A model generated the notes under the pieces. It was not told the DNA's origin, did not search any database, and worked only from the letters and a program-made list of their open reading frames with translations. A DNA stretch of 64,000 nt, taken from assembly GCF_006345805.1 (NCBI RefSeq), contig NC_042998.1, positions 18,848,001 to 18,912,000 on the forward strand. The letters run 5' to 3'. The DNA is from Octopus sinensis (lineage: Eukaryota). This document shows positions 1,049 to 41,870 of this stretch, in pieces (positions within the stretch are counted from its first letter, which is position 1; every line of letters begins with the position of its first letter). The translations under genes were made by a program, and so were the position numbers.

Positions 1049-1101
<53 letters not shown>

Positions 1102-1115
1102 CTTCTTTCTCTCTC

Positions 1116-1172
<57 letters not shown>

Positions 1173-1197
1173 TCTCTATATATATTATATATATATA

Positions 1198-1257
<60 letters not shown>

Positions 1258-1442
1258 GTGTGTCTACACATAAACATATATGTCTGTAATTATTTATAAA
1301 TATATATTATATTATATAAGAGATATATAGTTTATCAATTTTATCTTTGTCTCTCTTTGTATATATCTTCACACACACACACACACACATATATGTTTAT
1401 ATGTTTATATGTTTACTGTTTCATTCAAATAAAATCATCAGG

Positions 1443-2567: not shown

Positions 2568-2778
2568 TGCATATTATACATGAAATATATATATAGGCTC
2601 GGGAGAGGCTGTGTGGTAAGTAGTTGGCTTACCAACCACATGGGTTCGGGTTCATTTCCACTGCGTCGTACCTTGGCCAAATGTATTCTACTATAGCCTC
2701 GGGCCGACGAAAGCCTTGTGAGTGGATTTGGTAAGCGGAAAGTGGAAGAAGCCCGTCGTATATATGCATATATGTATA

Positions 2779-2843
<65 letters not shown>

Positions 2844-3076
2844 TGTGTGTGTGTGTGTGTGTCTGTGTCTGTGTTTGTCCTCCCGCCAACATAGCTTGAC
2901 AACCGATGTTGGTTTGTTTGCGTCCCCGTAATCTAGCGGTTCGGCAAAAGACAGAACCGATAGAATAAGTACTAGGCTTCCAAAGAATAAGTCCTGGTGT
3001 TGATTTGCTCTGACAAAAAGGTGTGCTCCAGCATGGCCGCTGTCAAATGCCTGAAACAAGTTAAAGACTAAAGAGT

Positions 3077-3077
<1 letters not shown>
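2342..3077 (+). mobile_element. SINE family A: tail fragment (2342-2527) and full copy (2595-3077)
   Basis: Shared head, internal microsatellite and tail GCATGGCCGCAGTCAAATGACTGAAACAAG. Confidence 0.88.
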
Positions 3078-5187: not shown

Positions 5188-5591
5188 CAGGAGTGGCTGT
5201 GTGGTAAGTAGCTTGCTAACCAACTACATGGTTCCGGGTTCAGTCCCACTGCGTGGCATCTTGGGTAAGTGATTTCTGCTGTAGCCCCGGGCCCACCAAT
5301 GCCTTGTGAGTGGATTTGGTAGACGGAAACTGAAAGAAGCCTGTCGTATATATGTATATATATATATATGTATGTGTGTGTTTGTGTGTCTGTGTTTGTC
5401 CCCCTAGCATTGCTTGACAACCGATGCTGGTGTGTTTACGTCCCCGTAACTTAGCGGTTAGGCAAAAGAGACCGATAGAATAAGTACTGGGCTTACAAAG
5501 AATAAGTCCCGGGGTCGATTTGCTCGACTAAAGGTGGTGCTCCAGAATGGCCGCAGTCAAATGACTGAAACAAGTAAAAGAGTAAAAGAGT
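5188..5591 (+). mobile_element. SINE family A, full-length
   Basis: A box TGGCTGTGTGG, B box GGTTCAGTCCC, internal (TA)/(TG) tract, (AAAAGAGT)n tail. Confidence 0.92.
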
Positions 5592-6249
5592 ATATATATA
5601 TATTTCTAAGTTCCTCTAGCGGAGATACGAAAGCGGTACTGCATGTTAATAGTTATCGCCAAGCTAACATGGCAATCCAAGAACAATAGGACGAATGCTG
5701 CAGCTGATTAGCTCCAAGAGGCCATCACTATGTGACACACGAACCTATGTCCATTATAATCTTCGATCAGTGTGTGTGTGGGGGGGGGGCCGCTTCCACT
5801 TGCCGGTCTTGCATCTACAGATTAATTTCAGGGTATTTGCCCCTTATCAATATAGAGCAGCCGAACCAGGCAGGTGTCGCTGCTGACCATCTGTTCGAAG
5901 GATTATTTACCTAAATTCAGTCGAATACATCCACTGGTTTTCAAATATATATGCATATTTGAAATATATACCATGAAATTTGTCTCTAAATACATAGAGA
6001 AATACGTACATAACTCGTTTAACGTCATACTGTTACAAAGAGATAAACATCCCTCTTATGTACAACCATTAATGTTATACCACCTGATGAAATGAATCAA
6101 AGATAATGATCAACCGGGTGCTCACGGATACGATGGACTACACTCTAATCATTCCAGGAATACGTACTGTGATCTTAAGAGTCATGTGGTCTGTAGAATC
6201 GCACGTAGGGATTCATTAAAAGTTTATAAACTCCATCCAAGCATTATCG

Positions 6250-6391: not shown

Positions 6392-7930
6392 TCCCTTACT
6401 TATATTAGTTGCTTCTCTAGAGATAAAATCGTATAAATACAAAATGCTTAAATGTATATCAAATGAAGAACTATTTGATATTTGGTCGTGTATATATAAA
6501 ACAAATATTATTTGTAAATGAATAGTAACATTCATAAAATTTAATGATAACACTTGAAAAGAGCAATTTTGTGTCCATTCACAAAACGATATTAATGCTT
6601 TAATGATATTCTATATAGTAGTGAGCAGAGGTTATCATGAAAAGTCCACAAGTCAACTGAATGATTTACAGTGAAATATTTTCTGCTAACTCTTATCGTT
6701 ATTAACTCAAACAAAAGCAGGACTATTATTATGTTTACGTATAAAAATGGACTACTACCACTTGCTCCTAATATTTAAATATATTTCAGAATCGTATGTA
6801 AATTTCTTGTTGAATATAAACAATGAATACTACTCGATAAAGCTATGAGTTAACATCTGTTTTATTGTAGAAATTGAAGTTTTCGCTTGTAAAGCATCTT
6901 TCAATAATAAAATGGAAATATATATCAGAAAAAAGACGCAATGTATTATGTATTAGTCGGGCAGTATTTACTATTACATTCGATTTCTCTTCTGTTTCTG
7001 TAAAATTAATATTTAACAGATGTTTTATAGTAATTGTGGCATATCGTACGGAATTTTTGTAGCAACTACGAAACAACTGTCACATTTTGCGGTCAAAGCT
7101 GTGCCGATCATCATTCATATCTCTCTTGTTTCAATATAATTCTGAGCATTACCGTTTAAAGAAAATCCAGTTATGAACATCTAGAATATCAAACACGTTC
7201 ATGAAGGCTATGCCCACAATTGATTGTCATACGGTGCTTTTACATAAGTAATTCTAGAAGTTGCGCATCTGACATGCAGTACATGCAAATTTATAAATTT
7301 CTTTATTCCTGAAGTCTAAAAGCGTTCAACGATTTATAATGAGTGCTAATATAAACTGCAACACAGAAAATTTAATAAGTATATTACGACGTCTCATCTC
7401 GGAAGAAAAATACATCGCTAAGACAGAATATCTTTTGAACATGATCGTATTATATATAACAAAGAAATGGAACCAATCTCCCTGAGCATAAGTTTGAAGG
7501 TTTATATTTAAGATGTGTATTTTCTATAAATGTTTAAGAGAAATCCACAATGTCTAAAGAAGTTTGATATGTATAATAAATTCATTTTCTCCGAATCTGA
7601 ATGCTTAATAGTTCAAATTTAATAGAAACAACAAACTTACTTAGAGGAAATCATATGCAGTTATATCGTGACAAGTTCCAAGATTGATAAAGAAAAAAAA
7701 ATAGCTTCAAGGAGAAATAGCGTTTTGTTTTGACATATTTAAGTTTCATTGGCAATGATTTTTATTAATGAATTAATGAAGAGCATTAATATCATTTTTT
7801 CTGAAAGAAATGTTTTTATAAGTTTATTAACATTTTTCATCGGAGTACGTAAGACATGTACACACATACACATTTACATACAGACCAACCCATATATGTA
7901 AATATAAGTATATATGTCGATATATATATG

Positions 7931-8147
<217 letters not shown>

Positions 8148-8156
8148 ATATATATA

Positions 8157-8228
8157 TCAGAGGATGTGTAAACATCATGAGGGATGGTTTCATCCAAGCA
8201 AATACTGGTTTAATATCTAGTATTTATG
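8157..8228 (+). repeat. ~72 bp direct repeat flanking the array (further copies at 10220-10292 and 10949-11014)
   Basis: TCAGAGGATGTGTAAACATCATGA(A)GGGATGGTTTCATCCAAGCAAATACTGGTTTAATATC occurs three times. The first two copies each follow an (AT)n tract. Confidence 0.95.
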
Positions 8229-8300
8229 TGTATATGTAAATATATATATATATGTCGATAATATATATATATAATATATATGTATGTATGTATATGTATG

Positions 8301-8334
<34 letters not shown>

Positions 8335-8582
8335 TATATATATATATATATAATATATATAATCAATCAATATAGGGTGGCAAAAAATTTTGTAGAATGT
8401 TTTTGCCACCAGCGGCCTAGTGGGAAAAAAAGTAAATAGTCATAGACCATTTTTAGTTCAACATCACAATCAAGGAACGGCCATAATAGGCCATTCACCC
8501 CTATAAATAAACAGCCAAAGCTTCAACGCAAAATAACATTAATTCCGTAAACCAGGAGAAAATTAAAAAACATTTACCCTGT

Positions 8583-8685
8583 ATTTCTTATACGATGCAC
8601 CGTTTCATCTACTGTTTAATGAACTAACCTGATTAAATTAAATCAAGCCAATCTTCCATAGGCCCTTAGAATCGTCAGTAAGAAT
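8583..8685 (-). ncRNA. Type I hammerhead ribozyme (unit 1)
   Basis: Same core. CUGACGA is the reverse complement of 8672-8678, GAAA of 8603-8606 and GUA of 8591-8593. There is a 1-nt deletion in stem I and a small deletion in stem II. Confidence 0.65.
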
Positions 8686-9063
8686 AGCCAGATCGGAACA
8701 GATATTTTCACGAGGCATTTCTGTCCCTGCCTCGCAATATCTGACCTAAAATTTTCAAATCATCGCACTCGCGCCAAATTTATCGGCAGCAAATAAGTAT
8801 AAGCCGCCGATTCCATTACGGAATTAACGAGAAAATTCATAATTAATCAATATAGGGTGGCAAAAAATTTTGTAGAATTTTTTTGCCACCAGCGGCCTAG
8901 TGGGAAAAAAATTAAATAGTCATAGACCATTTTTAAGTTCAACATCACAATCAAGGACGGCCATAATAGGCCATTCACCCACTAGAATAACAGCCAAAGC
9001 TTCAACCGCAAAATAACATTAATTCCGTAAACCAGGAGAAAATTAAAAAACATTTACCCTGTA

Positions 9064-9169
9064 ATTTCTATACGATGCACCGTTTCATCTACTGTTTAAT
9101 GGTAAACTAACCTGATTAAATTAAATCAAGCCAATCTTCCATAGGCCCTTAGAATCGTCAGTAAGAAAT
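9064..9169 (-). ncRNA. Type I hammerhead ribozyme (unit 2)
   Basis: Core intact, with CUGACGA as the reverse complement of 9155-9161. There is a 1-nt deletion in the 3' strand of stem I. Confidence 0.65.
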
Positions 9170-9550
9170 AGCCAGATCGGAACAGATATTTTCACGAGGC
9201 ATTTCTGTCCCTGCCTCGGCAATATCTGACCTAAAATTTTCAAATCATCGCACTCGCGCCAAATTTATCGGCAGCAAATAAGTATAAGCCGCCGATTCCA
9301 TTACGGAATTAACGAGAAAATTCATAATTAATCAATATAGGGTGGCAAAAAATTTTGTAGAATTTTTTTGCCACCAGCGGCCTAGTGGGAAAAAAATTAA
9401 ATAGTCATAGACCATTTTTAAGTTCAACATCACAATCAAGGAACGGCCATAATAGGCCATTCACCCACTAGAAATAACAGCCAAAGCTTCAACCGCAAAA
9501 TAACATTAATTCCGTAAACCAGGAGAAAATTAAAAAACATTTACCCTGTA

Positions 9551-9657
9551 ATTTCTTATACGATGCACCGTTTCATCTACTGTTTAATGGTAAACTAACC
9601 TGATTAAATTAAATCAAGCCAATCTTCCATAGGCCCTTAGAATCGTCAGTAAGAAAT
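9551..9657 (-). ncRNA. Type I hammerhead ribozyme (best copy, unit 3)
   Basis: Minus strand reads AUUUCUUA-CUGACGA-[extended stem II]-GAAA-CGG-UGCA-UCG-UA/UAAGAAAU. Stem I is an 8-bp perfect helix flush with the core. Stem III is ACGG/UCGU with a UGCA loop, and the cleavage triplet is GUA (9559-9561). Deviation: the 10.1-11.1 pair is U.U rather than the usual G-C. Confidence 0.78.
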
Positions 9658-9966
9658 AGCCAGATCGGAACAGATATTTTCACGAGGCATTTCTGTCCCT
9701 GCCTCGGCAATATCTGACAAAATGGTCTATGACTATTTAATTTTTTTCCCACTAGGCCGCTGGTGGCAAAAAAATTCTACAAAATTTTTGCCACCCTATA
9801 TTGATTAATTATGAATTTTCTGGTTAATTCCGTAATGGAATCGGCGGCTTATACTTATTTGCTGCCGATAAATTTGGCGCGAGTGCGATGATTTGAAAAT
9901 TTTAGGTCAGATATTGCCGAGGCAGGGACAGAAATGCCTCGTGAAAATATCTGCTCCGATCTGGCT

Positions 9967-10073
9967 ATTTCTTACTGACGATTCTAAGGGCCTATGGAAG
10001 ATTGGCTTGATTTAATTTAATCAGGTTAGTTTACCATTAAACAGTAGATGAAACGGTGCATCGTATCAGAAAT
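9967..10073 (+). ncRNA. Type I hammerhead ribozyme (inverted unit 4)
   Basis: ATTTCTTA 9967-9974, CTGACGA 9975-9981, GAAA 10050-10053, GTA 10063-10065. The 3' strand of stem I, TCAGAAAT, has one mismatch. Confidence 0.68.
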
Positions 10074-10194
10074 TACAGGGTAAATGTTTATTTAATTTTC
10101 TCCTGGTTTACGGAATTAATGTTATTTTGCGGTTGAAGCTTTGGCTGTTATTTCTAGTGGGTGAATGGCCTATTATGGCCGTTCCTTGACTGTG

Positions 10195-10225
<31 letters not shown>

Positions 10226-10354
10226 GATGTGTAAACATCATGAAGGGATGGTTTCATCCAAGCAAATACTGGTTTAATATCTAGTATTTATGGGGAAAGA
10301 ATTTCTTTAAAATAATAAGTATATATATAAAAAAAAACATATAGTTTATAATCG

Positions 10355-10708
10355 TTTAAACGAAGAAAAGAAAATGGAGATTAGGAAGTTAATAATTGTT
10401 TATTATTAAAAGCAAATTGTTCATTTCCACTTACAACCGTTTCAATTAATACTCAATAAACATTAAATTCACATAAATGTGACATGAACACAATGTCATC
10501 AGAGGAGAAAAGATGAACATTTGGACTAAATTGTGTGTTTATGAATTCATTAAGCAGACTGATGATGTTGTGCCCGTGTCACACGCCAATGCAAATTTAC
10601 TGTTTATTAAGTATTAATTGAAACGGCTGTCAGTGAAGATGACTTATTTGCTGTTAATAATAAGCAATTATTAACTTCCTAATCTCCAATTTCCTTTCTT
10701 CTTTTAAA
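10355..10708. mobile_element. MITE-like fold-back element with ~105 bp imperfect terminal inverted repeats
   Basis: 10358-10462 is approximately the reverse complement of 10601-10705. Both ends are TTTAAA. Confidence 0.75.
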
Positions 10709-11048
10709 TGTATATATATATATATATATAGTGTGTGTATGTGTGTGTGTGAGAGAGAGAGGAGAGAGAGAGAGTAAATGGCTAACGTCAGCCGAGTGTA
10801 ACTTTGGGTTATTTCCAGAGAAGCACTCAACTTGAAAACTGGGCTGAAAACACTGTCGGGATCCAAGCCGAGGCCGGAATACCTCTGGTGTAGAAAATCC
10901 AAGTTTCACGACGATTATAGCGTCATATGGATTGGCGAAGAGTATATATCCGAGGATGTGTAAACATCATGAAGGGATGGTTTCATCCAAGCAAATACTG
11001 GTTTAATATCCAGTGATGTGTTCTTTCTTTGTCTTCTTCTCTTCATTG

Positions 11049-11079
<31 letters not shown>

Positions 11080-11080
11080 A

Positions 11081-11144
<64 letters not shown>

Positions 11145-11233
11145 CTCTCTCTATCTTTTATCTATCTATCTATCTATCTATCTAACTTTCTGTCTATAAT
11201 ATATATATCTATATCTATATATATATCTATATC

Positions 11234-11295
<62 letters not shown>

Positions 11296-11296
11296 T

Positions 11297-11336
<40 letters not shown>

Positions 11337-11390
11337 CTACAATACAATAATATTATTTCCTTTAGACAATATTATCTATTTACATACATA

Positions 11391-13108
11391 CAGTTGCGGC
11401 CAAAATGTTCAGAACGGCATTGTTTTCGACAGAAAAGTAGGTATAAGTTTTTATCAAAGTTATTTTATGTTCTATAATTTTCACACACAATAAATACAAT
11501 ATTAATTGTTATTGTCTGAGAAAATTAAGTATAAGCTTTTATTAAACTTGTTTTGTATTCTATAATTTTCACAGACAATAAATACTATATTAATTGGTAT
11601 TGTCTGAGATTTTGGTGTAATTTGAGCGGATAATACACAAGTTATGGATGATTTACTGATTTACTGCAAAACCCATGGAGCCCAAAATGATCAGAACGGT
11701 TGAAAATATAACAAAATAATAAAAAATGACAGAGAATACTGGAATTATTTAATATTTAGTGTGAAGCCCTTTAGCTTCAATCACACTTTGACATCTTCGA
11801 CTGCATGAGGAATTTAAATTTTCAATTTCTTGCTAGGTGATCTTATTCCATTTTTCCTGAAGGGCATTCCATAATTGCTCGGTTGTTTTAGGAGTTCTGG
11901 CTTTCGAACGTTCTCCTAGAATATTCCACACATTTTAAATAGGATTGAGATCTTGGCTTTGAGCAGGTCAATCAATAATAATAACCTTTTCAGCCTTGAG
12001 TAAGTTCATGACCACCTTAGCCTTGTGACATGGGGCATTGTCCTGCATGAATATGGATGGTCGCTTAGTTGAATTTCTCAGCACAGGCAAGACATGTTCT
12101 TTTACAAGTTGTTTATAAACTCTTGCATTTACCTTTCCGTGTAATCGCACCAAAGAGCCCATACCATCTCCAGATATCATCCCCCAAACCATGACACTTC
12201 CTCCACCGAATTTAACACTAGTCTTAAGGCATTTAGGCGACAATTTTTCACCTACTTTTCAACGAAAGTACATTTTCCCATCTGAGCCAAATAACATAAA
12301 CTTAGATACATCACTGAAATGCACCGTTTGCCATTTTTCTTGAGACCACAACACATGTTCGGTTGCAAAGGTAAGACGACACTTTTTATTTTTGGAGCTG
12401 ATCAGTGGCTTCACTGCAGGTGCTCTTGCTTGTAGGTCATGTTCAACTAAATGATGAGACAGTTTTTCGAGATAAAGTTTTCTTCAGTACAATGCTCATT
12501 TCCCGAGAAACAGCAGCAACAGTTTTAAATCTGTCCTTTTTAACCAACTTTATCATAGCACGATCTTCTCTCTTGGTCGTTTTTTTTGGCCTACCTGTAG
12601 ACTTTTTTGCTTCACATGAACCACAATCATTGTAGACCTTAAGAATACCGTGAACAACACTTTTTTGACTTGTTGACAATATTTTCAATAGACCCAATAC
12701 TTAAATTATCCTTCTTTCGAAGCTTAATAATCTACTGACGAATTGGTAACGGATTAAGTGGCATTATATTAACAAAGTACACTGCAGACATTCTTACTAA
12801 TGTTTAGTAAATGAACCATCACGTAAACAAATTCAAAACATTAGAGTTCGCCGGTTATACATACTAAAACACGGAGTAAAAGCAACCGTTCTGATCATTT
12901 TGGCCGCCATGGGTTTTGCAGTAAATCACTAAATCATCCATAACTTTTGTATTATCCTCTCAAATTACACTAACGTCTCAGACAGTAACAATTAGTATTG
13001 TATTTATTGTCTGTGAGAATCATAGAATATATAAAACAACTTTGATAAAAACTTATATATACTTTTCTGTCGAAAACAATGCCGTTCTGAACATTTTGGC
13101 CGCAACTG
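11391..13108 (-). mobile_element. Full-length Tc1-family DNA transposon with IR/DR-type long TIRs
   Basis: Termini CAGTTGCGGCCAAAATGTTCAGAACGG in inverted orientation with TA on both sides. TIRs are over 200 bp and contain an inner copy of the outer motif (CCAAAATGATCAGAACGG). A transposase pseudogene lies inside. Confidence 0.97.
11749..12764 (-). pseudogene. Tc1 DD34E transposase, inactivated
   Basis: Motifs KKSTGRPKKTT, VHFSD, VKFGGGSVMVWGMIS, FMQDNAPCH and *PAQSQDLNPI*NVW. Contains stops (including at the catalytic E) and frameshifts. Confidence 0.95.
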
Positions 13109-13119
13109 TACGCAGACAC

Positions 13120-16010: not shown

Positions 16011-18579
16011 GATAGGTAAATAGATAGATAGATAGATAGATAGATATATAGTTATGTGTATGTATATATGTATTTAATTGCATATGAGACTATATACGCA
16101 CTCACACACACACACACGCACATATCTATGATAGATATATAGCCGACAGTGTTCCTGTTGACTTCGGTTAACATAAATTTAATTTAATTTAACTCTGGTT
16201 ATACATATTAATTTGTATCTTAATTACGTAATAATGGAATTAATGAGCTTTCTTTCTAATGAAACAGCTCTGGGATGCAATTAAATTATGAAACATCTCT
16301 GAAAATGCTTTTCTGACCTTTTTCAAAATATACATGAATATTCACATATTCAAACATACAAACATACATGCATACACACATACATATGTACATATATATA
16401 TATACAAGTATATATGCATACATATTATACATATATACATATTTACACACATATAAATATATGTCTGTATGTGTGTGTGTGTTTGAATGTGTTTCTGTAT
16501 GTGTATACGCTTATGTACAGATGCATATATATGCAATAATTTGAAATATTTGATGGTATTTACAGTTTATAAATTCGATTAGTGCATTTTATTTATTTTC
16601 CGTGTTATTATATCATATATTTACGAATGGTGTTTTGGTGCTATTCTGAATTATATTATATTTACGATAAATAATATGTAATTCATTAACCTTAGTGAAT
16701 GCACGACACCTCGACCCTAACCCTAACCCTAACTAATACTGTAACATTACTGAGACTTGATTGTGACGTGTGTTCGTAATGAAGCATCATCCGTATTCGT
16801 TGAATTGTAGAATACATAGAAAATAAATCTCCGCTCTAAAAAAGTGTCAAAATAGAGTCCTATTCCAGACATATATTCTAATGGCACGGTTAAATATGAA
16901 ATTAACTTAATCTACATATTTAGCGACAAATGCATAAATTACTTGTTACATTTAAGCGAGCGATTTATGCGGTTTCGACAACCACTGTTTGCATGCTTTC
17001 GGAAGCTTTTGCGAACATCATATCGTATACATCATATCGTATACATCATCACCAAATCCCACCCTGAATTCATTCTCAGAATGATCAATTTGATATCGTA
17101 CGAGCAAGCTCCAAGTACGAAACACGTACAAAAGTGTTTCAATGTCAATGTTTTCCTATTTATTCAGGCCAAGTTCTTGTGTAAAAAATGCTCGATTTAA
17201 ATCACCGTATACCACTATGATGCAGCACCTTCTCAGCCATTGTTAAGAAGGAATTACACTCTGAAAAACATTCTTTTTTATGTAATACTCAATAGCTGCA
17301 GGCGAGTATGTAAATTTAGTTTCACGGTAACGAATATCTTAAGCTTATTGCCAAACACTTTTGTAGGTATTTGCTGGAGAAGCCTTAATGTAACGGAACA
17401 AGAAACCATTTCTCCTCTAACATGGTTCACAGGAAAAAAAAAATATCTGTCTCTTCTCCAAATTTATTTTCTCTCAATAGAAATATTTTACGAGATTATT
17501 AATGATGTCTCTGAAACATATATCAAATGAAGGAATTATTTCCAGAGACGGGCTTTAGGATATTACAATGTCGATGAAATTTATTAGTGATAAAGATCTC
17601 CAAAATTTTACGGATATTTTACTATTTCTTACCTTCTTAATTTCTTTACGAGAGTAAAATTTTATAACATACATAGATATAAACATTGTTTAAAAGCTGG
17701 TTTCGTTTATATAAATCCTCAATAGCTTGCGCATTTACCGATGTGTTGTGAATGTAAAATATGTTTATATGAATATCTTAGCAAGAATTAATACATTCAT
17801 GAGAACAAAAGCGATAAATAAAAGTAATAATATATAAGTCAAAATTGAACCATAGAATTTCCAATAATGATACAGTATTTCTTCACTGCTGCTGTTCCAA
17901 CTATAAAACACAACCAGTTATATCGGTAATATCTCTATAATACAGATTGAAACAAAAGTGTATACCTCAAAGGTTACATCGGAAAACGGAATGTGAAGGG
18001 GTTTGTAGTTAAAAGTGAAATTTCCGGATACCATACTACAAGGTAGAATTCCCTGAGAATATGTTACTTTTTGTAAACATTAAGATGTTTCTACTATCAC
18101 AATTCCTTATCTAATAATATATTATGAAGCGGAACTGCATATGAAGACTTTCCTCCAAATTGTAGTGTTTTACATCATTAAAGAAATGCCATAATTCCTT
18201 ACAGGTTTAAATATGTTACGGTTGTGTCTTCCTGATGATTTCTAAAACAATGAAAGAGTGCTCTATATCATTACCAATACTCTTTTACTTGTTTCAGTCA
18301 TTTGACTTTGGCCATGCTAGAGCACCGCCTTTAGTCGAGCAAATCGACCCCAGGACATCATTGTGGTTTTGAGACCTGGGCAGTACCATTTAATCCGGTG
18401 GCGTCAACAGCACTAAAATAAGTGTTGTTTGACAACAAACAATCCAAAGAAACCACAACTTTCACAAACATTTACCCAATTTACAACTGTATCGATAAAT
18501 AAATTCAATAAATGAATTACAACCACATGGCTAGAAGTTTTAAAGAATTTGTATTAAATTAAATGCACAAAAATAAATA

Positions 18580-18976
18580 GGCGCAGGAGTGGCTGTGTGG
18601 TAAGTAGCTTGTTTACCAACCACATGGTTCTGGGTTCAGTCCCACTGCGTAACACCTTGGGCAAGTGTCTTCTACTATAGTCTCGGGCCGACCAAAGCCT
18701 TGTGAGTGGATTTGGTAGACGGAAACTGAAAGAAGCCCGTCGTATATATGTATATATATGCGTGTGTGTGTGTGTACGTCTGTGTTTGTCCCCCTAGCAT
18801 TGCTTGACAACTGATGCTGGTGTGTTTACGTCCCCGTTACTTAGCGGTTCGGCAAAAGAGACCGATAGAATAAGTACAAGGCTTACAAAAGAATAAGTCC
18901 TGGGGTCGAGTTGCTCGATTAAAGGCGGTGCTCCAGCATGGCCGCACTCAAATGACTGAAAACAAGTAAAGAGAGT
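18580..18976 (+). mobile_element. SINE family A, full-length (an opposite-strand tail fragment lies at 18286-18355)
   Basis: Close match to 5188-5591. Confidence 0.92.
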
Positions 18977-19339
18977 ATGATTTTTATGCATTTTTTCTTC
19001 TAATTCCTTAATTTCACTTTCATTTTCATAATCATATTTCATATTACTACAAAACGATTACCTTCTATGTAACAACTGCCAATGTCACAAAAAATACAGC
19101 TGGAAGCATTAAAGTATGCTATTAACAATATTGCGAGTTTCGAGCAACTTCTTGGATGTTGTCATACATGTATTCAACTAGATGTACACAGACATCGAAG
19201 GTTCAGTAATTGACATCAATTCCTAAATTTCGATTAGTTCCTTTTCTTTTTTGACCTGTGAAACTTACTTTCATTCTCTTTATTTTCAGTCGCCTAATTC
19301 TCAAATAATTGTACAATAATTGTGCAGTAAAATGTCTGA

Positions 19340-20680: not shown

Positions 20681-21979
20681 GAGCAAATACTCGAATGCTT
20701 ACATTCGAAATAAGATATTACTTTTGCTAATATTATATGTGGGCGAGCAAGCGAGACCATGGTATATGAGCATCTAAATGGCATAATCCTTAATCCGGTG
20801 GTGTCAACAGCACTAAAATAAGTGTTGTTTGGGAACAAACAAACCAAAGAAACCACAACTTTCAAACACATTTACTCAATGAACAACCGTTTCGATAAAT
20901 AAATTCAATAAATGAATTACAACCACACCTGAATACGTAGCGAAACACTGGTAACTCTATTAAATCATGCAAAAATTACAATCCCTTTCCGCCTTCGGTA
21001 GTGTAATATAAAAGCACAACCTTAATAAGTACAATATTTCAATGAATCAAAATTTAGGCAGGATTAAACATTAACTTTAATAAAACTATAACAAAGAGAC
21101 ATATAAATCAACGTACATTGTATAGTTATTAATAGCAAACTACAATAACTAAATTATATGCTAAATTGCGACCAATCTTTAAGCCCATACAAATAATAAT
21201 CCCACTGGTCTTCCACATATGCTACTATAATGAAAGTTAAAGCCTTATAAAAATCTCTAAACAAAACACGATTGAAAATAATTTAACTAATATTTTTATG
21301 ACTGAAATACATTATTTCATCATTCAGAAGTTAATAATAAAACCCTACATACCCGTTAATATTTCACCACTACAAGCTACACAATTACTTCAAAAGACAA
21401 TTGCTGTAATGTAAATTTTCATGTTGCCTAAAGCACTTTTATACATATTACCTTAAATTTAAGTAGTTACATTCTCCTTATCAAAAATGTCATTAAAACT
21501 GCTAAAAGAATTTCCTGAATCCCTATTTTATGCTGGGATGCATTTGTACCTACCATATTTTCTGTTCGTCTTTCACTATTGGCGTAAATATATATGTAAA
21601 ATTCAGTTTCAAGGCATTTAAAAGGTATTGCATATTAACGCTCTCATTCCAGTTCCTGTGCCACATTTCATATTTAAAATTCAACGTTCTTCCGCAAAGG
21701 TAATCTTTGATATATTCGTCTTCGTGATATATCAACATATTTTTAAAGGTTTTCCAGTTTAATGTTGTATCTTGGATATAGTTATAAATCTACCATACAA
21801 ACGAAGTAGGTTATAAATTTATATAGGGATTTATAACTTATCAAATTGCCTTAGTAACATTTAACTCAGTACAATCTCTCGCCATGACGGATCATCGTCG
21901 ATTGACAAGACGAGGAAAAAAACACGTCAAAGGCGGAAGAGTTCAAAAGAGTCAACGGTCATCCGAAAATGACTGAAGT

Positions 21980-28440: not shown

Positions 28441-29237
28441 CTTATATCACTAATACTTACCAGATCAACCCCATTAGCATTACTGAAGTATCTCACACAT
28501 GGGTATTGCATCATAATATGGAGTTGGTATTTACACGAATTTCTAGGCTTTGTAGTAAATCTTACATACGCCAATCTAACTAGCAAACAATATTCTATAG
28601 TGCGGTATCGATAAATGATTATTAAGGTTCAGTTGTATTGTTATGCGCACACCTCTTCTATTTCTATATTCGATAATGAATATATTTTTTAATAATTAAT
28701 TAATTTTTAGTAGCTTTTTGATTGACGTTTTCAAAATAAAATGCAATTTTTGTTTCTCCCCCATGTGCTTTATGAGGAAATGTATGATCTAATTACTTTT
28801 AGCACACAATTTAATGTTTTATAATCCATTGGGTTCTTCAATGAGGTGTTACTAAAGTTCGTAACATACAATGAAATACCTTTGAAGCGTGCATTGAAAT
28901 GGATGTTGTTTCTCTTAACTTCCACAAGATTTAAAGGGGGATTCCTGTTCAGTATATGAAGCAAGACTATTCTGGTCATACTTCAAGTTGTTGATTGTAT
29001 TTTTACAAAATATATTTTTACTGCTCCACTGAGTTGGTCATTAACAAGAAAAGGCATTATTGGTCCTGAATGAATGCACACATTCCGCAAAAGCTTACTG
29101 CGCGGCTTGGGAGTAATTTTTGCAGTAAAGCCCGTCATAAAATGCGAAACAAATTAAAGGTATTTCTTGTGCAACTTGTTACAGAAGGCGCCAGTAGAAT
29201 TTAATTTATGTCCGTGTGTATATATATGTTTATACAT

Positions 29238-29920
29238 ACTCTTTACTCTTTTACTTGTTTCAGTCATTTAACTGCGGCCATGCTGGAGCACCGCCTTTAA
29301 TCTAGCAACTCGACCCCGGGACTTATTCTTTTGTAATCCCAGTACTTATTCTATCGGTCTCTTTTGCCGAACCGCTAAGTAACGGGGACATAAACACACC
29401 AGCATCGGTTGTCAAGCAATGCTAGGGGGACAAACACAGACAGACACACACACACAAACATATATATATATATACGACAGGCTTCTTTCAGTTTCCGTCT
29501 ACCAAATCCACTCACAAGGCATTGGACAACCCGGGGCTATAGCAGAAGACACTTTCCCAAGTTGCAACGCAGTGGAACTGAATCCGGAACCATGTGGTTG
29601 GTTAACAAGCTACTTGCCACACAGCCACTCCTGCATATATATTCTTTTCTTTTTCCTTTAACTTGTTTCAGTCATTTGACTGTGGCCATGCTGGAGTACC
29701 GCCTTTAGTCGAAGAGATCAACCCCAGGGCTTATTCGTTGTAAGCCTAGACAAACAAATACGTACATATATATATATTCGACGGGATTCTTTCAATTTCC
29801 GTCTACCAAATCCACTCACAAGACTTTGGTCGGCCCGGTGTTTTAGCAGAGACATTTGCCCAAGGTACCACGCAGGGGGCCGAAACGGGAACCATGTGTT
29901 TGGAAAGCAAGCTTCTTTAT
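29238..29920 (-). mobile_element. SINE family A: full copy (29238-29634) plus adjacent degraded copy
   Basis: Reverse complement of the family A sequence. Confidence 0.9.
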
Positions 29921-30899: not shown

Positions 30900-31578
30900 G
30901 TATGTATTTATGTATGCATGTATGTATAAATATCGAGTTGTTTAAACCTAGCATTTTATTTTACCACATCTGTGATGACAGATCATCCAACGACCAATTT
31001 CGTTTTCTTCTCTTAAGCATTACATTATCTAGAACTACATCACCAATGTGTTACCTTTTCCAAGACGATACGCTATGTTTCCAGGTTTATGTGTTGACTG
31101 TATTAAGTAGAACTGGAAACAGCATGTGATAGGTTTATGGATTTATATGTAGGAAGAACTATTATTGTAACGTAAGCCCTCATTTTCTTCCGTTATTCGG
31201 AAACCTATATTTTGAAGTGGAGAAATTGCTATGTGGATTCTCCATAGTTTGAAATAAGTAATGTTATGTAATGTGATACGTATGTAACCAGAAATTTAAA
31301 CAAGAGTACGCTACGAAAGTTCATAATACTTAACAAAAGAAATATCATAGTCATGGCAGGGTATAGTTTGATTAAGACTGCTTCATCAGAACTTAATAAA
31401 AGCAAAGTCCACCTCTGATTTTCTTTTAAGTAGAAAACGAAACGGTGCTGTGAGAGAACTGAATCTATTAGGATAAATCAACAACTCTGAAAGATTCCGA
31501 ACAAAAGATGTTTCATTAAAAGTTATATAAGCATCAAGTAAGTGATAAAAATTTATTTATCATATAAATTTATTCATA

Positions 31579-31989
31579 GGCGCAGGAGTGGTTGTGTGGA
31601 AAGTGGCTAGCTTAGCAACCACATGGTTCCAGGTTCAGTCCCACTGCGTGGCACCTTGGGCAACTGTCTTCTACTATAACCTCGGTCCGAACAAAGCCTT
31701 AAGAGTGTATTTGGTAGACGGAAACTGAAAGAAGCCCGCGGTATATATGTACATATATATATGTGTATGTGCTTGTATATGTTTGTGTGTCTGTGTTTGT
31801 CCCCCAACATCGATTGACAACTGATGCTGGTGTGTGTACGGCCCCGTAACTTAGCGGTTCGGCAAAAAAGACCGATAGAATAAGTACTAGGCATACAAAG
31901 AATAAGTCCTGGTGTCGATTTGCTCGACTAAAGGCGGTGCTCCAGCATGGCCGAAGTCAAATGACTGAAACAAGCAAAAGAAAGAGAGT
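31579..31989 (+). mobile_element. SINE family A, full-length
   Basis: Close match to 18580-18976. Confidence 0.92.
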
Positions 31990-32425
31990 ATGCCCCCACA
32001 AAGTTCAGAATTATTGGTTCCCTGTATATTCTTAAGCTTTGAATTTAAATGCATTTCAAATTTTTATTTCCTTCGTGAAGTTTTTATTCTCGGATGTATA
32101 CTGGATCACAACGTCCTTTTTGTATATGTTTTAACAAGTAATTTATGGCGAAACATTCTACGATCCGAGTAACACTCGTGAGTTTTGTGAGTTGTGGCTA
32201 ATCTGAAATCACTGTAAGTCTTTGCTTCTCAGTAATGACACAACAAAGTTGTGCCAGTAACAAGATCGGGGATGCTTCCTATTGTTTTCATATTTATCTA
32301 TATACTGAGATACATTTTTATGATTGTTAGACAGAACTGTTAATAGAAAGACAGCAGTCGCAAACTGCCTACATTCAATTTTGTTCTGTTCCATGCTATC
32401 CTATTACATTTGACCACACTGTGTG

Positions 32426-33109: not shown

Positions 33110-33112
33110 GTC

Positions 33113-33519
33113 TCTTTTTATCTTTTATTTGTTTCAGTCATTTGACTGCGGCCATGCTGGAGCACAGCCTTTAGTCGAGCAAATCGTCGCCCCCAGGACT
33201 TATTCTTTGTAAGCCTAGTATTTATTCTATCGGGGTCTCTTTCCGAACAGCTAAGTGACGAGGACGTAAACACACCAGCATCGGTTGTCAAGCGATGTTG
33301 GAGGGGTGGGCAAACACAAACACACAAACATATACATACATAAATATACATATATATACGGTGGGCTTCTTTCAGTTTCCGTCTACCAAAGCCACCCACA
33401 AGGCTTTGGTTGGTCCGAGGCTATAGTAGAAGACACTTGCCCAAGGTATCAAGCTGTGGGACTGAAACCGGAACCATGTGGTTGGTAAGCAAGCTACCTA
33501 TCACACAGCCACTTCTGCG
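33113..33519 (-). mobile_element. SINE family A, full-length
   Basis: Reverse complement of the family A sequence. Confidence 0.9.
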
Positions 33520-34109
33520 TCTATTCTATTTTTATTATCTTTATCTTGACGGCAATAAACTGGATGGCTAGAACTATGTAGTTAATGCTAAGCTTATTGG
33601 AAACAACATTTTTTAGTGTTCCTTTTCTCATTCTGTTTCCAATATCGGAGAAGGAGCGTTTCACCTAGATAGTGCTGCTTGCCATACAAAACCGAACAGG
33701 AATCTTGAGGGTTCTTTCAGGTTATGCAAAGAGACGGCCATCACGTTTTGTGCCGCCCATGCGTAAGAATCCGGCTAGGAACTTCTAGCAACAGCTTTTT
33801 ACTTGTTCTCGTCGCCGTATCCCGTCGCTATAGAGCTTTAAACTTCTTTTCCGAATACCTCTATAATGAATTTGCTTTAAGCCGTACGAGTTTAAGTCAT
33901 CCATCACACTCTCCCGTCCAAATAGCCTAGACTCTAGTGCATATTAATGCCACGTGGATAAAGGCTGTCGGGACGAAGGGCTGGTGGTTCGAGAACGCTG
34001 AATATAGAATTTATACAGGCTTCCATAACAGATGAAAATCCTACACATAAACAGCATCAGCACAAACACAAGAACAACAACAATAATAACAACAACAACA
34101 TCAATAATA

Positions 34110-39220: not shown

Positions 39221-39507
39221 CCATATGTATTTCCACACCAATAGTAGGCGCTTGAAAGGATACCCAGCCTTCATCTTTAGCTCTCGGAGGTAACGTTCTA
39301 TTTGTAATTAGATACCAATTAGAAACAATGAAATAATTGTAATAACTACTGATATTACTTCATGCCAATGCAAAACCAGGCCGAGATATCGCATGACTCT
39401 TTTACTGATTCAAAGGGAATTTACTTTTTGTGACAGAAAAGATTTGATTTAGCAGTTTGATCGAGCGTCTTGATAAGACCTACAACTCTGTCGGCAGTAT
39501 ATATATT

Positions 39508-39868
39508 ACTCTTTACTCTTTTACTTGTTTCAGTCATTTGACTGCGGCCATGATGAAGCACCGCCTTCTAGTCGAGTAAATCGACCCCCCAGGACTTATT
39601 CTTTATAAGCCTAGTACTTATTCTATTAGTCTCTTTTGCTGAACCGCTAAGTTACGGGGACGTAAACACACCAGCATCGGTTGTCAAGCAATGGTAGGGG
39701 AGGGGGCCAAACACAGACACATAAACATACACACACATACATATATAAACATATATACGACGGGCCTCTTCCAGTTTCCGTCTACCAAATCCACTCACAA
39801 GGCTTTGGTCGGCCCGAGGCTATAGCAGAAGACACTCACCCAAGGTGCCACGCAGTGGGAATGAACCC
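39508..39868 (-). mobile_element. SINE family A, head-truncated
   Basis: Reverse complement of the family A sequence. Further partial copies at about 46545-46670, 47486-47680, 48010-48154, 51238-51385 and 63905-64000. Confidence 0.88.
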
Positions 39869-40847: not shown

Positions 40848-41870
40848 TTAAGTATCTAAATATGATACTATCGAAGTATTTAAAGCCTTCACTAGATTCG
40901 GACCTTTTAACTTTGACTTCATTAGCACCCTTACCCTTCTGATGTACTTCTCAATTGTCGTTTTCATTACTGTAGTTAGTACTCTGTCAGATTCTAATAC
41001 TCCTAGATACTTATAACTCTCTCTTCCTTTCAATGATTTTAATGTCTGGCTATCTGGTAATTGGATGCTTTGCCGTTGACTACCTGTTCCCTTCTTATGA
41101 CTTACATTGCATACTTATCTATGCCAAAAACGCAATGCTTATATCTTTGCTGAAGAGTCTTACAGTCTGTATTAAGGATTCTCTATTTTTCATTTTTACT
41201 AAAACATCTTTAGATAATCCATGTAGAGCAAATGGATATTTTTTCCATTACTATTTCTGAACAGATATTCTGCATTTGTCTTCCTTAATACTAAACTGAA
41301 TGGGATCCAACATAAGACAAATACGAAAGGAGTCAACAAGTCACCCTGGAAAATTCCTTTTTTGATATTAACTTTCCTTAAGAGTGAGTCATCTGAGTAG
41401 AGACCTACTTTCCATTTCTTGATGCTAATTCTAATTAATTCTCTTATGTTGTCTGCTATACTGAACATACTCAAACTTTCACTTATCCATGAGTGTGGGA
41501 TCATGTCATAGGTTTTCCTATAATCTGTCCATACAATTACTAGATTTTTCTCCCTAGATTTTACTTCATTTAGAACTGCTTCGTTTATATATGATAGCAC
41601 ATGCGTTCTTTTACTCTTCTTCCTGCAAATTCTCTATTCATTTTGTAGTAAATTCTGGTTGTCAAGGTTCTCGTAAATGCTTTCTGAAAGCATTCCTGTT
41701 AACAGCTTCTACATTAATGTTAAGAAGGTGATCGGTCTACAGCTGCTAGCTGTATTACCCTTGCTCTTATCCTCATAATGAGTATTGTCTTTTTCCTCTA
41801 GTCATCCAATTTGGTATTATTTCTCCGTTAAAGAAATCCTGAATTTGTTCCCTCAGCCCCTTCCACCGTA
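40848..41870 (-). mobile_element. R4/Dong-like (RLE-type) non-LTR retrotransposon RT remnant
   Basis: YRPITFL-like, WTDYRKTYDMIPHSWI, KKGIFQGDLLTP, HLLYMDYLK, ESYKYLGVLE. Confidence 0.85.

What the first reader, a model, noticed from the sequence alone, without database searches (positions are those of the whole stretch)
8365..10196. Candidate retrozyme / viroid-like circular RNA: ~485-nt structured unit with one hammerhead ribozyme per copy
Seen: each of four copies carries, in the same order, stem I 5' strand (AUUUCUUA), CUGACGA, a long stem II, GAAA, stem III (ACGG-UGCA-UCGU), GUA, and stem I 3' strand (UAAGAAAU). Stem II folds as UCUA/UAGA, an internal loop, AUGG/CCAU, then a 12-bp AUUGGCUUGAUU/AAUCAGGUUAGU helix. 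Stem I extends past a GCU/UA internal loop (CUG/CAG), as in extended type I hammerheads. Cleavage sites at about 8590, 9070 and 9558 would release 480-488 nt monomers. Established: tandem type I hammerhead repeats (non-LTR retrozymes) give circular RNAs in several metazoans, usually at shorter unit lengths. Inference: this is an integrated concatemer of a non-coding circRNA retroelement, possibly a new and unusually long family. Caveat: the 10.1-11.1 pair is U.U, not G-C.
Basis: partly seen in the sequence, partly recalled or inferred. Interest (0 to 1): 0.93.

Follow-up and report, generated by a model that had tools for sequence, protein, structure and literature searches.

The report
Hammerhead-ribozyme tandem repeat (animal retrozyme)
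A 485-base non-coding repeat, present as three head-to-tail copies plus one inverted copy inside an (AT)n microsatellite, carries a hammerhead self-cleaving RNA motif in every copy and looks like an ordinary, decaying member of the known animal "retrozyme" class of circular-RNA retroelements, not a new kind of element.

Summary
The repeat and the hammerhead (HHR) motif are real. The region 8359-9718 holds 2.8 direct copies of a 480-488 bp unit, and 9719-10196 holds one inverted 478-bp copy. All copies are 96-100% alike. Each copy has a type I HHR layout with every invariant core base. A relaxed descriptor finds such a motif by chance about 0.001 times per window. Only one of the four HHRs is fully intact.

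No Rfam HHR model detects the motif, nor does a model I built from four published retrozyme HHRs. The likely reason is that helix II is 68 nt long.

The U10.1·U11.1 caveat has a published precedent in active axolotl retrozymes. Helix III is a 12-nt palindrome. A two-unit transcript folds as a true double hammerhead with free cores, while the monomer fold sequesters the core.

The unit is non-coding, has 37% GC and is strongly structured (z = -6). The locus has three features of Penelope-like-element (PLE) insertions: a partial tandem array, an inverted copy at its 5' end, and an (AT)n target. It also has a 98-bp flanking duplication.

The unit length lies within the known range of 51-972 bp.

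No homologues could be retrieved. Cleavage, circular RNA, covariation and copy number therefore remain untested.

Verdict: a new member of a known kind, of moderate interest.

The parts
7892..8130 (.). (AT)n microsatellite, left flank of the insertion (presumed target)
   Evidence: TRF row 7892-8361, period 2; sequence read.
8131..8228 (+). Left copy of the 98-bp flanking direct repeat: (AT)14 plus 71 bp of unique sequence. Resembles a target-site duplication.
   Evidence: Self-BLAST: 8131-8228 versus 10195-10292, 98% identity over 99 columns, the only such pair in the window.
8229..8358 (.). AT/ATGT-rich filler of 130 bp between the left flanking repeat and the 3' end of the direct array
   Evidence: Sequence read. 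Its origin is not resolved: target microsatellite, or a tail made during integration.
8359..8590 (-). 3'-most partial unit, 232 bp (unit positions 1-235). Element sense is the minus strand.
   Evidence: Pairwise alignment to the reference monomer: 9 differences.
8591..9070 (-). Full monomer between two predicted cleavage sites, 480 nt
   Evidence: H17 positions. Six 1-3 nt deletions and no substitutions relative to the neighbouring monomer.
9071..9558 (-). Full monomer, 488 nt, used as the reference. GC is 36.7%. The circular fold gives -145.3 kcal/mol, z = -6.1.
9559..9718 (-). 5'-truncated first unit of the direct array, 160 nt (unit positions 329-488)
   Evidence: Identical to the reference over 160 nt.
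9719..10196 (+). Inverted copy, 478 bp (unit positions 141-488 plus 1-130, ten bases short of one full turn). It joins the array head-to-head at 9718/9719.
   Evidence: BLAST, inverted repeats I1-I5, alignment.
9545..9665 (-). Hammerhead 3, the only fully intact copy. Helix I is 8 bp plus loop plus 3 bp. Core CUGACGA is at 9649-9643. Helix II is 68 nt. Then GAAAC, helix III ACGG-UGCA-UCGU, and cleavage after A at 9559.
9057..9177 (-). Hammerhead 2. Core at 9161-9155, H17 at 9071. One A is deleted in the helix I 3' strand next to the cleavage site.
   Evidence: It fails the descriptor's requirement of >=5 contiguous helix I pairs.
8577..8692 (-). Hammerhead 1. Core at 8678-8672, H17 at 8591. 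Helix I is 6 bp. A 3-nt deletion removes the CCAU strand of helix II.
9961..10079 (+). Hammerhead 4, in the inverted copy. Core at 9975-9981, H17 at 10065. An A-to-C change breaks the second pair of helix I.
10195..10292 (+). Right copy of the 98-bp flanking direct repeat: (AT)13 plus 72 bp

Best explanation
This is one young, already decaying insertion of a non-autonomous, non-coding retroelement of the animal 'non-LTR retrozyme' class. It was most likely mobilised by a Penelope-like element (PLE).

Proposed cycle:
1. A tandem array is transcribed. The sense strand is the minus strand for 8359-9718 and the plus strand for 9719-10196.
2. Neighbouring hammerheads pair through their palindromic helix III into a double hammerhead.
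3. [quoted passage not shown]
4. A host RNA ligase circularises the monomers.
5. In the monomer, part of the core (ACGAU) pairs with the 3' strand of helix III. The ribozyme is then switched off and the circle is stable.
6. A PLE reverse transcriptase/endonuclease nicks an (AT)n microsatellite and copies the circular or multimeric RNA from both nicks. This yields a head-to-tail array, an inverted copy at the array's 5' end, and a long target-site duplication.

Shown here: the repeat structure, the motif and its significance, the predicted folds, the absence of coding capacity, and the insertion architecture.

Inferred: transcription, cleavage, circularisation, and the identity of the mobilising enzyme.
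For: 1. Array and inverted copy.
2. Type I HHR topology. All positions invariant in four experimentally active retrozyme HHRs are present: CUGA.GA, GAAAC, G16.2-U16.1, U1.1, A2.1 (alignment A1, compared).
3. The descriptor's chance rate is about 0.0014 per window, and zero with helix I >=8 bp.
4. Helix III (ACGGUGCAUCGU) is a 12-nt palindrome. The hairpin gives -1.2 kcal/mol and the duplex -19.5 kcal/mol.
5. The unconstrained MFE of the real 626-nt transcript 9675->9050 is a true double hammerhead. The helix I strands are swapped between units, the shared 12-bp helix III has pair probabilities of 0.79-0.89, and both cores are unpaired.
6. In the monomer and in the circular fold, ACGAU pairs with AUCGU. 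This fold is 3.4 kcal/mol more stable than the HHR fold.
7. The unit is highly structured: z = -6.1, against -1.7 to +2.2 for nine ordinary control segments.
8. The unit is non-coding. The longest open frame is 47 codons and there is no Pfam hit. GC is 36.7%.
9. Only one polarity carries a ribozyme, and no other Rfam ribozyme was found at E<=10.
10. The insertion signature matches published PLE hallmarks: partial tandems, an inverted 5'-truncated copy adjacent to the 5' end, (TA)n target bias and variable-length TSDs (PMC8557442). Here the two 5' ends meet at 9718/9719, both 3' ends abut (AT)n, and a 98-bp direct repeat flanks the whole.
11. The copies run across the cleavage sites without a break. 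The template was therefore a circle or an uncleaved multimer.
12. A U·U mismatch at the base of helix II is documented in active axolotl retrozymes (PMC7229834) and as a natural variant (PMC3088659).
Against: - No Rfam hammerhead model matches, even at E<=10 on 146 nt.
- A covariance model built from four published retrozyme HHRs also misses the motif. The motif is an architectural outlier with a 68-nt interrupted helix II. Recognition rests on a descriptor and on inspection.
- The four copies descend from one event (0-1.7% substitutions). They give no covariation and no independent support.
- Differences among copies are not depleted in the HHR region. About 5 of 21 differences fall in the 25% of the unit that forms the HHR. 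There is thus no sign of selection at this locus.
- Three of the four HHRs are damaged.
- No homologue was found anywhere I could search.
- No PLE gene lies in the window, only decayed LINE fragments.
- A 98-bp TSD and a 130-bp AT-rich filler are unusual, and their origin is not explained.
- Many of the differences are 1-nt homopolymer deletions that could be assembly errors.
Confidence: 0.7

Rival explanations
1. The unit is not a dedicated non-autonomous retrozyme. It is the 3'-terminal or pseudo-LTR part of an autonomous Penelope-like element. On this reading the array is a set of extremely 5'-truncated PLE copies laid down in the usual PLE tandem/inverted fashion, with no circular RNA needed.
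For: - PLE pLTRs carry type I HHRs.
- PLE insertions are heavily 5'-truncated and form partial tandems with an inverted copy and an (TA)n bias (PMC8557442; PMC4209133).
- Retrozyme consensus sequences are homologous to PLE pLTRs in Xenopus (bioRxiv 10.64898/2026.07.22.740005).
- The architecture here fits equally well.
Against: - The unit has no trace of an RT or GIY-YIG reading frame.
- The repeat period equals the distance between cleavage sites, and the inverted copy is almost exactly one period long (478 of 488). This fits a unit-length template better than random truncation of a 3-4 kb element.
- Metazoan PLE HHRs are usually 'minimal', with no or a 1-bp helix III (PMC4209133). Here helix III is 3-4 bp plus a tetraloop.
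Confidence: 0.15
2. The element belongs to a satellite or retroelement family descended from a hammerhead, but the ribozyme is catalytically dead or nearly so. The proposed causes are the U·U at 10.1/11.1, the long helix II and the competing ACGAU/AUCGU helix. The repeat would then spread or persist without self-cleavage or circular RNA.
For: - All covariance models fail.
- The monomer MFE is not the HHR fold.
- Three of the four local copies are damaged, and changes are not depleted in the HHR region.
- G10.1-C11.1 is described as highly conserved in PLE and canonical HHRs (PMC4209133).
Against: - A cloned axolotl repeat whose HHR (Amex2) has the same U·U mismatch cleaves, and it cleaves efficiently as a dimer (PMC7229834).
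- The dimeric transcript's MFE is a perfect double hammerhead with free cores.
- Retention of all 13 core and junction nucleotides plus a palindromic loop 3 is hard to explain without recent function.
Confidence: 0.1
3. The hammerhead resemblance is a coincidence in a hairpin-rich tandem repeat or DNA-level palindromic element.
For: - No curated or custom covariance model supports the motif.
- The unit is full of hairpins on both strands, with z about -6 for both polarities.
- Relaxed descriptors do give false positives in large genomes (PMC3088659).
Against: - About 0.001 chance hits are expected per window, and none reach the observed helix I length.
- The motif sits in register once per unit of a tandem repeat that has a PLE-type insertion signature. 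That is the genomic context of known HHRs.
- The palindromic loop 3 and the double-hammerhead MFE were not part of the descriptor.
Confidence: 0.03
4. The locus is an integrated cDNA of an infectious viroid-like or delta-like circular RNA replicon, not a genomic retroelement.
For: A unit of about 485 nt, a strong secondary structure and a hammerhead.
Against: - There is a ribozyme on one polarity only, and no other Rfam ribozyme.
- There is no ORF.
- The retrotransposon-type integration, with its flanking duplication and (AT)n target, is what the retrozyme cycle produces.
- No match was found in viral or metagenome collections.
Confidence: 0.02

Closest known systems
Metazoan non-LTR retrozymes (Cervera & de la Pena 2020, PMC7229834), e.g. 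Mytilus galloprovincialis 350-390 bp repeats and axolotl Rtz_353 with HHR_Amex2
   Same: - Tandem non-coding repeats of low GC, with one type I HHR per unit.
- Short helix III capped by a palindromic tetraloop (mussel GCGC, axolotl ACGU, here UGCA).
- GUA cleavage triplet and a U·U mismatch at the base of helix II, as in axolotl Amex2.
- Predicted dependence on a dimeric hammerhead.
- Highly self-paired monomer.
- In some mussel circles, as here, the most stable fold does not leave the HHR free.
   Different: - Helix II is 68 nt (4 bp, internal loop, 4 bp, 14 bp) instead of 4 bp plus a 5-6 nt loop. Rfam models and a model trained on those HHRs therefore do not detect it.
- Helix I is 8 bp before its internal loop, not 6.
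- There is no detectable sequence similarity outside the core.
- Expression, circularity and genome copy number are unknown here.
Penelope-like elements and their pLTR hammerheads (PMC4209133, PMC8557442)
   Same: - Partial tandem plus an inverted 5'-truncated copy.
- (TA)n microsatellite target.
- Target-site duplication of variable length.
- Type I HHR that works as a dimer through a palindromic helix III.
   Different: - No RT or GIY-YIG ORF in the unit or in the window.
- The HHR has a real helix III and no single extra base between A9 and 10.1. It is not the 'minimal' PLE type.
- G10.1-C11.1 is replaced by U·U.
Hammerhead satellites: newt satellite 2 (~330 bp) and Dolichopoda pDo500 (463-505 bp; PMC2837043)
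   Same: - Tandem repeats of similar length, with pDo500 almost identical in size.
- One hammerhead per unit.
- Single- and double-hammerhead modes proposed.
- The HHR fold is often not the MFE of the isolated motif.
   Different: - Those are high-copy satellites with comparative and experimental evidence of cleavage.
- Here there are only four copies at one locus, with clear insertion boundaries.
Plant LTR retrozymes and Avsunviroidae viroids
   Same: - A circular-RNA logic in which the ribozyme is active in multimers and blocked in the most stable monomer fold.
- Double-hammerhead cleavage, as in avocado sunblotch viroid.
   Different: - Those carry type III HHRs.
- Retrozymes of plants have LTRs, a PBS and a PPT.
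- Viroids have ribozymes on both polarities and are not integrated in DNA.

Membership tests
Hammerhead ribozyme, type I | Conserved core C3 U4 G5 A6 N7 G8 A9 / G12 A13 A14 / A15.1-U16.1 / H17 (not G), in the order helix I 5' strand, core, closed helix II, GAAA, closed helix III, H17, helix I 3' strand | tested here: met
   All four copies have CUGACGA ... GAAAC ... GUA in that order, with helices II and III closed and helix I open.
Hammerhead ribozyme, type I | G10.1-C11.1 pair at the base of helix II | tested here: not met
   U·U in all four copies. This is a known natural variant that retains activity (PMC3088659; axolotl HHR_Amex2, PMC7229834). It is therefore not disqualifying.
Hammerhead ribozyme, type I | Match to a curated covariance model (Rfam Hammerhead_1, _3, _II, HH9, HH10) | tested here: not met
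   No hit at gathering score, at E<=10 on 2 kb, or at E<=10 on 146 nt. A custom model from four published retrozyme HHRs also fails. I attribute this by inference to the 68-nt helix II.
Hammerhead ribozyme, type I | Covariation supporting helices I-III among homologues | not testable with these tools
   Only four near-identical copies exist from a single event. No homologues were retrieved.
Hammerhead ribozyme, type I | Mg2+-dependent self-cleavage 3' of H17 | not testable with these tools
   Needs an in vitro transcription assay.
Non-LTR retrozyme (metazoan) | Short tandem repeats (published range 51-972 bp), each carrying one type I HHR | tested here: met
   480-488 bp units, 2.8 direct copies plus 1 inverted copy, one HHR each.
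Non-LTR retrozyme (metazoan) | Non-coding, no LTRs, GC below 50% | tested here: met
   Longest open frame 47 codons, no Pfam match. GC 36.7%. No terminal repeats other than the unit itself. PBS and PPT were not searched for specifically.
Non-LTR retrozyme (metazoan) | Target-site duplication, when present, longer than 4 bp | tested here: met
   98-bp direct repeat at 8131-8228 and 10195-10292. That it arose as a TSD is an inference.
Non-LTR retrozyme (metazoan) | Monomer RNA predicted to be highly self-paired | tested here: met
   Circular MFE -145.3 kcal/mol, z = -6.1, 61% of bases paired.
Non-LTR retrozyme (metazoan) | Multi-copy, dispersed family in the genome, coexisting with PLEs | not testable with these tools
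   No other copy lies in the 64 kb. The source genome is not available. No PLE ORF was found in the window.
Non-LTR retrozyme (metazoan) | Expressed as linear and circular monomer RNAs | not testable with these tools
   No transcriptome access.
PLE-mediated insertion | Partial tandem with an inverted 5'-truncated copy adjacent to the 5' end, and a microsatellite (TA)n target | tested here: met
   Head-to-head junction at 9718/9719. Both 3' ends abut (AT)n. Criteria are taken from PMC8557442. LINE twin priming gives a similar topology and is not excluded.
Viroid-like / Avsunviroidae-type replicon | Self-cleaving ribozymes on both polarities | tested here: not met
   The antisense polarity of the unit carries no HHR under the descriptor and no Rfam ribozyme at E<=10.

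The most novel reading that the evidence does not exclude
The unit represents a lineage-specific retrozyme family with two unusual properties. Its hammerhead has a 68-nt, three-segment helix II. It is also built to cut only as a double hammerhead. Such elements are invisible to all covariance-model annotation, so retrozymes of this architecture would be systematically under-counted. The locus would also be a rare clean 'fossil' of twin-primed copying of a unit-length circular RNA by a Penelope-like enzyme: the inverted copy is one turn minus 10 nt, with an (AT)n target and a 98-bp duplication.
Probability: 0.3. Interest if true: 0.55.

Novelty: new member of a known kind. Interest (0 to 1): 0.4.

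Why it matters
If the family is active, it adds another animal lineage to those that make abundant ribozyme-derived circular RNAs.

It would also show that a hammerhead tolerates a long, interrupted helix II together with a U·U base pair. Rfam-type scans miss that architecture completely, which matters for censuses of ribozymes and retrozymes.

The locus itself is useful single-site evidence for the proposal that animal retrozymes are mobilised by Penelope-like elements. That proposal has so far rested mainly on co-occurrence and on sequence relatedness to pLTRs.

Otherwise this is an ordinary repeat. It has no bearing on host genes within the window.

Tried and rejected
1. Rfam at gathering score on the whole window, at E<=10 on 8300-10300, and at E<=10 on 9535-9680. 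No hammerhead or other ribozyme appeared, only noise such as miRNA-like hits in AT repeats and hairpins.
2. A covariance model (R1) built from the HHRs of four published, experimentally cleaving retrozyme clones: coral Amil224, mussel Mg353, axolotl Ax353 and Ax330 (supplement of PMC7229834). With filters off it does not find the motif in the window or in the 146-nt stretch. Its best hits (5814-5856, 1414-1441, 18232-18263) lack helix I and are chance matches.
3. Homologue hunting. The pattern CTGACGATTCTA-N50-80-TAGATGAAAC gave one GC-rich bacterial contig in metagenome contigs. It gave one hit in genome contigs, inside an apparent protein-coding stretch of a bacterial MAG (my reading of the sequence). 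Both are chance. Viral contigs gave nothing. Two open frames of the unit searched as proteins against 5.8 billion proteins gave no candidate.
4. Organism identification. An RT-fragment search gave only three unnamed hits of 48-62% identity from Logan and ENA. An exact look-up of a 190-aa ORF was not on record.
5. tRNA or pol III origin. ARAGORN found nothing. An A-box-like GGCCTAGTGG lies on the antisense strand but is followed by a T5 run, so I rejected it by inspection.
6. Fold-back assembly artefact for the inverted copy. Rejected because the sequence after 9718 is not the reverse complement of the sequence before it. The copy starts at a different unit position.
7. A 10-kb segmental duplication, suggested by (TATC)n(TA)n arrays at 1049 and 11049. 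Rejected because the flanks are unrelated.
8. A literature search for hammerheads or retrozymes in cephalopods found nothing relevant.
Full report
**1. What is in the sequence**

Tandem Repeats Finder reports a 485-bp period over 8359-9718, with 2.8 copies and 97% matches. BLAST of one unit against the window finds three direct copies and a fourth, inverted copy at 9719-10196. It finds nothing else in the 64 kb.

I oriented the units on the hammerhead sense strand and cut them at the predicted cleavage sites. The direct array then reads, 5' to 3' on the minus strand:
- a 160-nt 5'-truncated unit (9718-9559);
- a 488-nt monomer (9558-9071);
- a 480-nt monomer (9070-8591);
- a 232-nt partial unit (8590-8359).

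The inverted copy covers unit positions 141-488 and then 1-130. That is 478 nt, ten bases short of one full turn.

The copies differ by 0-1.7% substitutions, plus several 1-3-nt deletions that lie mostly in homopolymer runs. The array is therefore young. Some of these differences may be assembly errors.

**2. The hammerhead motif**

Every copy has the elements in the type I order:
- helix I 5' strand;
- CUGACGA;
- a 68-nt helix II, made of UCUA/UAGA, an internal loop, AUGG/CCAU and a 14-bp distal helix;
- GAAAC;
- helix III, ACGG-UGCA-UCGU;
- A17;
- helix I 3' strand.

The other three each carry a lesion:
- One base is lost from the helix I 3' strand at the 9071 site.
- One base is lost from helix I, and three from helix II, at the 8591 site.
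- An A-to-C change breaks the second helix I pair in the inverted copy.

A relaxed descriptor that ignores the 10.1/11.1 pair gave 4 hits in 2,855 dinucleotide shuffles of the window. None had a helix I as long as the one observed. The motif is therefore far from a chance event at the scale of this window. It also recurs once per unit of a tandem repeat.

**3. Negative model-based tests**

None of the Rfam hammerhead families reports the motif. This holds at gathering score, at E<=10 on 2 kb, and at E<=10 on the 146 nt that contain the intact copy.

I then took the HHRs of four retrozyme clones shown to self-cleave in Cervera & de la Pena 2020: coral, mussel and two from axolotl (supplement). 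I aligned them (A1) and built a covariance model (R1). With filters off, this model does not align the motif either.

All columns that are invariant in those four ribozymes are matched by the candidate. The obvious difference is helix II, which is 68 nt here against 13-14 nt in the clones. I infer that this insertion defeats the models, but I could not test a trimmed sequence with the tools available.

By curated-model criteria, then, membership is not demonstrated. By descriptor and core criteria it is.

**4. The U·U caveat**

- Perreault et al. 2011 report natural hammerheads that start helix II with U10.1-U11.1. They note that this mismatch supports more activity than any other mispair (PMC3088659).
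[quoted passage not shown] A cloned repeat carrying it (Rtz_353) cleaves 22% in 1 h as a monomer, and its dimeric construct cleaves much better (PMC7229834). The published Ax353 clone also uses a GUA triplet.

**5. A dimer-dependent switch (predicted)**

Helix III together with its UGCA loop forms a 12-nt palindrome. As a hairpin it is worth -1.2 kcal/mol, and as a duplex -19.5 kcal/mol.

- **Monomer.** In the isolated 121-nt motif and in the 488-nt circle, the minimum-energy fold pairs ACGAU of the core with AUCGU of helix III. This hides part of the catalytic core. The fold is 3.4 kcal/mol more stable than the hammerhead fold.
- **Dimer.** The unconstrained minimum-energy fold of the real 626-nt two-unit transcript (minus strand, 9675->9050) is a textbook double hammerhead. 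The helix I strands are exchanged between units, the shared 12-bp helix III has pair probabilities of 0.79-0.89, and both CUGACGAU cores are unpaired.

This is the behaviour described for newt satellite 2, avocado sunblotch viroid, and the PLE and axolotl hammerheads: active in multimers, quiet in the monomer. It is a thermodynamic prediction, not a measurement.

**6. Nature of the unit**

- **Coding capacity.** The unit has no open frame longer than 47 codons and no Pfam match.
- **Composition.** GC is 36.7%, against 35% for the window.
- **Structure.** The unit folds far better than shuffled versions of itself (z = -6.1 sense, -6.3 antisense). Nine ordinary control segments gave z between -1.7 and +2.2.
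- **Ribozymes.** Only one polarity has a ribozyme.
- **Selection.** Differences among the copies are not depleted in the hammerhead region. About 5 of 21 fall in a quarter of the unit. This locus is drifting, as expected for an inserted copy.

**7. Insertion architecture**

In element orientation, the inverted copy sits immediately at the 5' end of the direct array. The two 5' ends meet head-to-head at 9718/9719, and the two 3' ends face outward. Each 3' end abuts AT-repeat sequence.

The whole is flanked by a 98-bp direct repeat at 8131-8228 and 10195-10292. It consists of (AT)13-14 plus about 71 bp of unique sequence, is 98% identical, and is the only such pair in the window. A 130-bp AT/ATGT-rich filler (8229-8358) lies between the left repeat and the array and remains unexplained.

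Craig et al. 2021 list the hallmarks of Penelope-like element insertions: partial tandems, an inverted 5'-truncated copy adjacent to the 5' end, a bias for (TA)n microsatellites, and target-site duplications of variable length (PMC8557442). Cervera & de la Pena 2020 proposed PLEs as the mobilisers of animal retrozymes. A 2026 preprint finds retrozymes and PLE pLTRs to be phylogenetically related.

The locus fits that picture. Both copies run uninterrupted across cleavage sites, so the template was a circle or an uncleaved multimer.

No PLE gene lies in the window. The only reverse-transcriptase traces are decayed LINE pieces. LINE twin priming would give a similar topology and cannot be excluded.

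**8. Comparison and novelty**

The element meets every sequence-level criterion of non-LTR retrozymes that I could test. These are tandem units each with a type I HHR, no coding capacity, no LTRs, low GC, a TSD longer than 4 bp, and a self-paired monomer.

Its length is not exceptional. Published consensus lengths span 51-972 bp, and the cricket pDo500 hammerhead satellite is 463-505 bp.

What is unusual is the long, interrupted helix II and the resulting invisibility to covariance models.

I could not obtain any homologue, and I could not identify the organism. Covariation, copy number, expression and cleavage therefore remain open.

I rate it a new member of a known kind, with 0.7 confidence in the retrozyme explanation and moderate interest.

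Noticed in passing
window 10347-10474 and 10589-10716: A large inverted repeat with 128-nt arms, 85% complementary and 114 nt apart, lies just to the right of the array's flanking repeat. A 488-nt segment containing it folds with z = -24.6. It resembles a MITE or a long hairpin.
   Followed up: partly
window 5188-5600, 18583-18977, 29231-29642, 31576-31992, 33112-33533, 39498-39868; partial copies at 575-870, 2583-3077, 47484-47679: An interspersed repeat family of about 400 bp, with at least eight copies in both orientations at 72-91% identity. It is SINE-like in size, but Rfam and ARAGORN find no tRNA, 5S or 7SL head. It is unrelated to the hammerhead unit.
   Followed up: partly
window 41202-41633 (-), 44439-44833 (-), 46070-46372 (-): Decayed LINE remnants on the minus strand. 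One RVT_1 fragment scores above the Pfam cut-off. Two weaker RVT_1 pieces and a weak AP-endonuclease (Exo_endo_phos) piece are also present. No GIY-YIG (Penelope-type) endonuclease was seen among the ORFs tested.
   Followed up: partly
window 8229-8358: A 130-bp AT/ATGT-rich stretch lies between the left flanking repeat and the 3' end of the array. It has no counterpart on the right side. It could be a target microsatellite, a tail made during integration, or a later expansion.
   Followed up: no
window 1049-1329 and 11049-11336: Two compound (TATC)n(TA)n microsatellites of nearly the same size lie exactly 10,000 bp apart. Their flanks are unrelated, so this is coincidence or a shared microsatellite-generating context, not a duplication.
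   Followed up: yes
window 11389-11702 vs 12883-13110; 18390-18527 vs 20790-20927: Two further short repeat pairs: one inverted at 88-92% identity and one direct at 92%. Their nature is unknown.
   Followed up: no
window 8414-8456 (+), repeated in each unit: On the strand antisense to the hammerhead there is a pol III A-box-like GGCCTAGTGG and, about 30 nt downstream, a weak B-box-like AGTTCAACATC. A T5 run lies between them. I judged this non-functional by inspection.
   Followed up: partly
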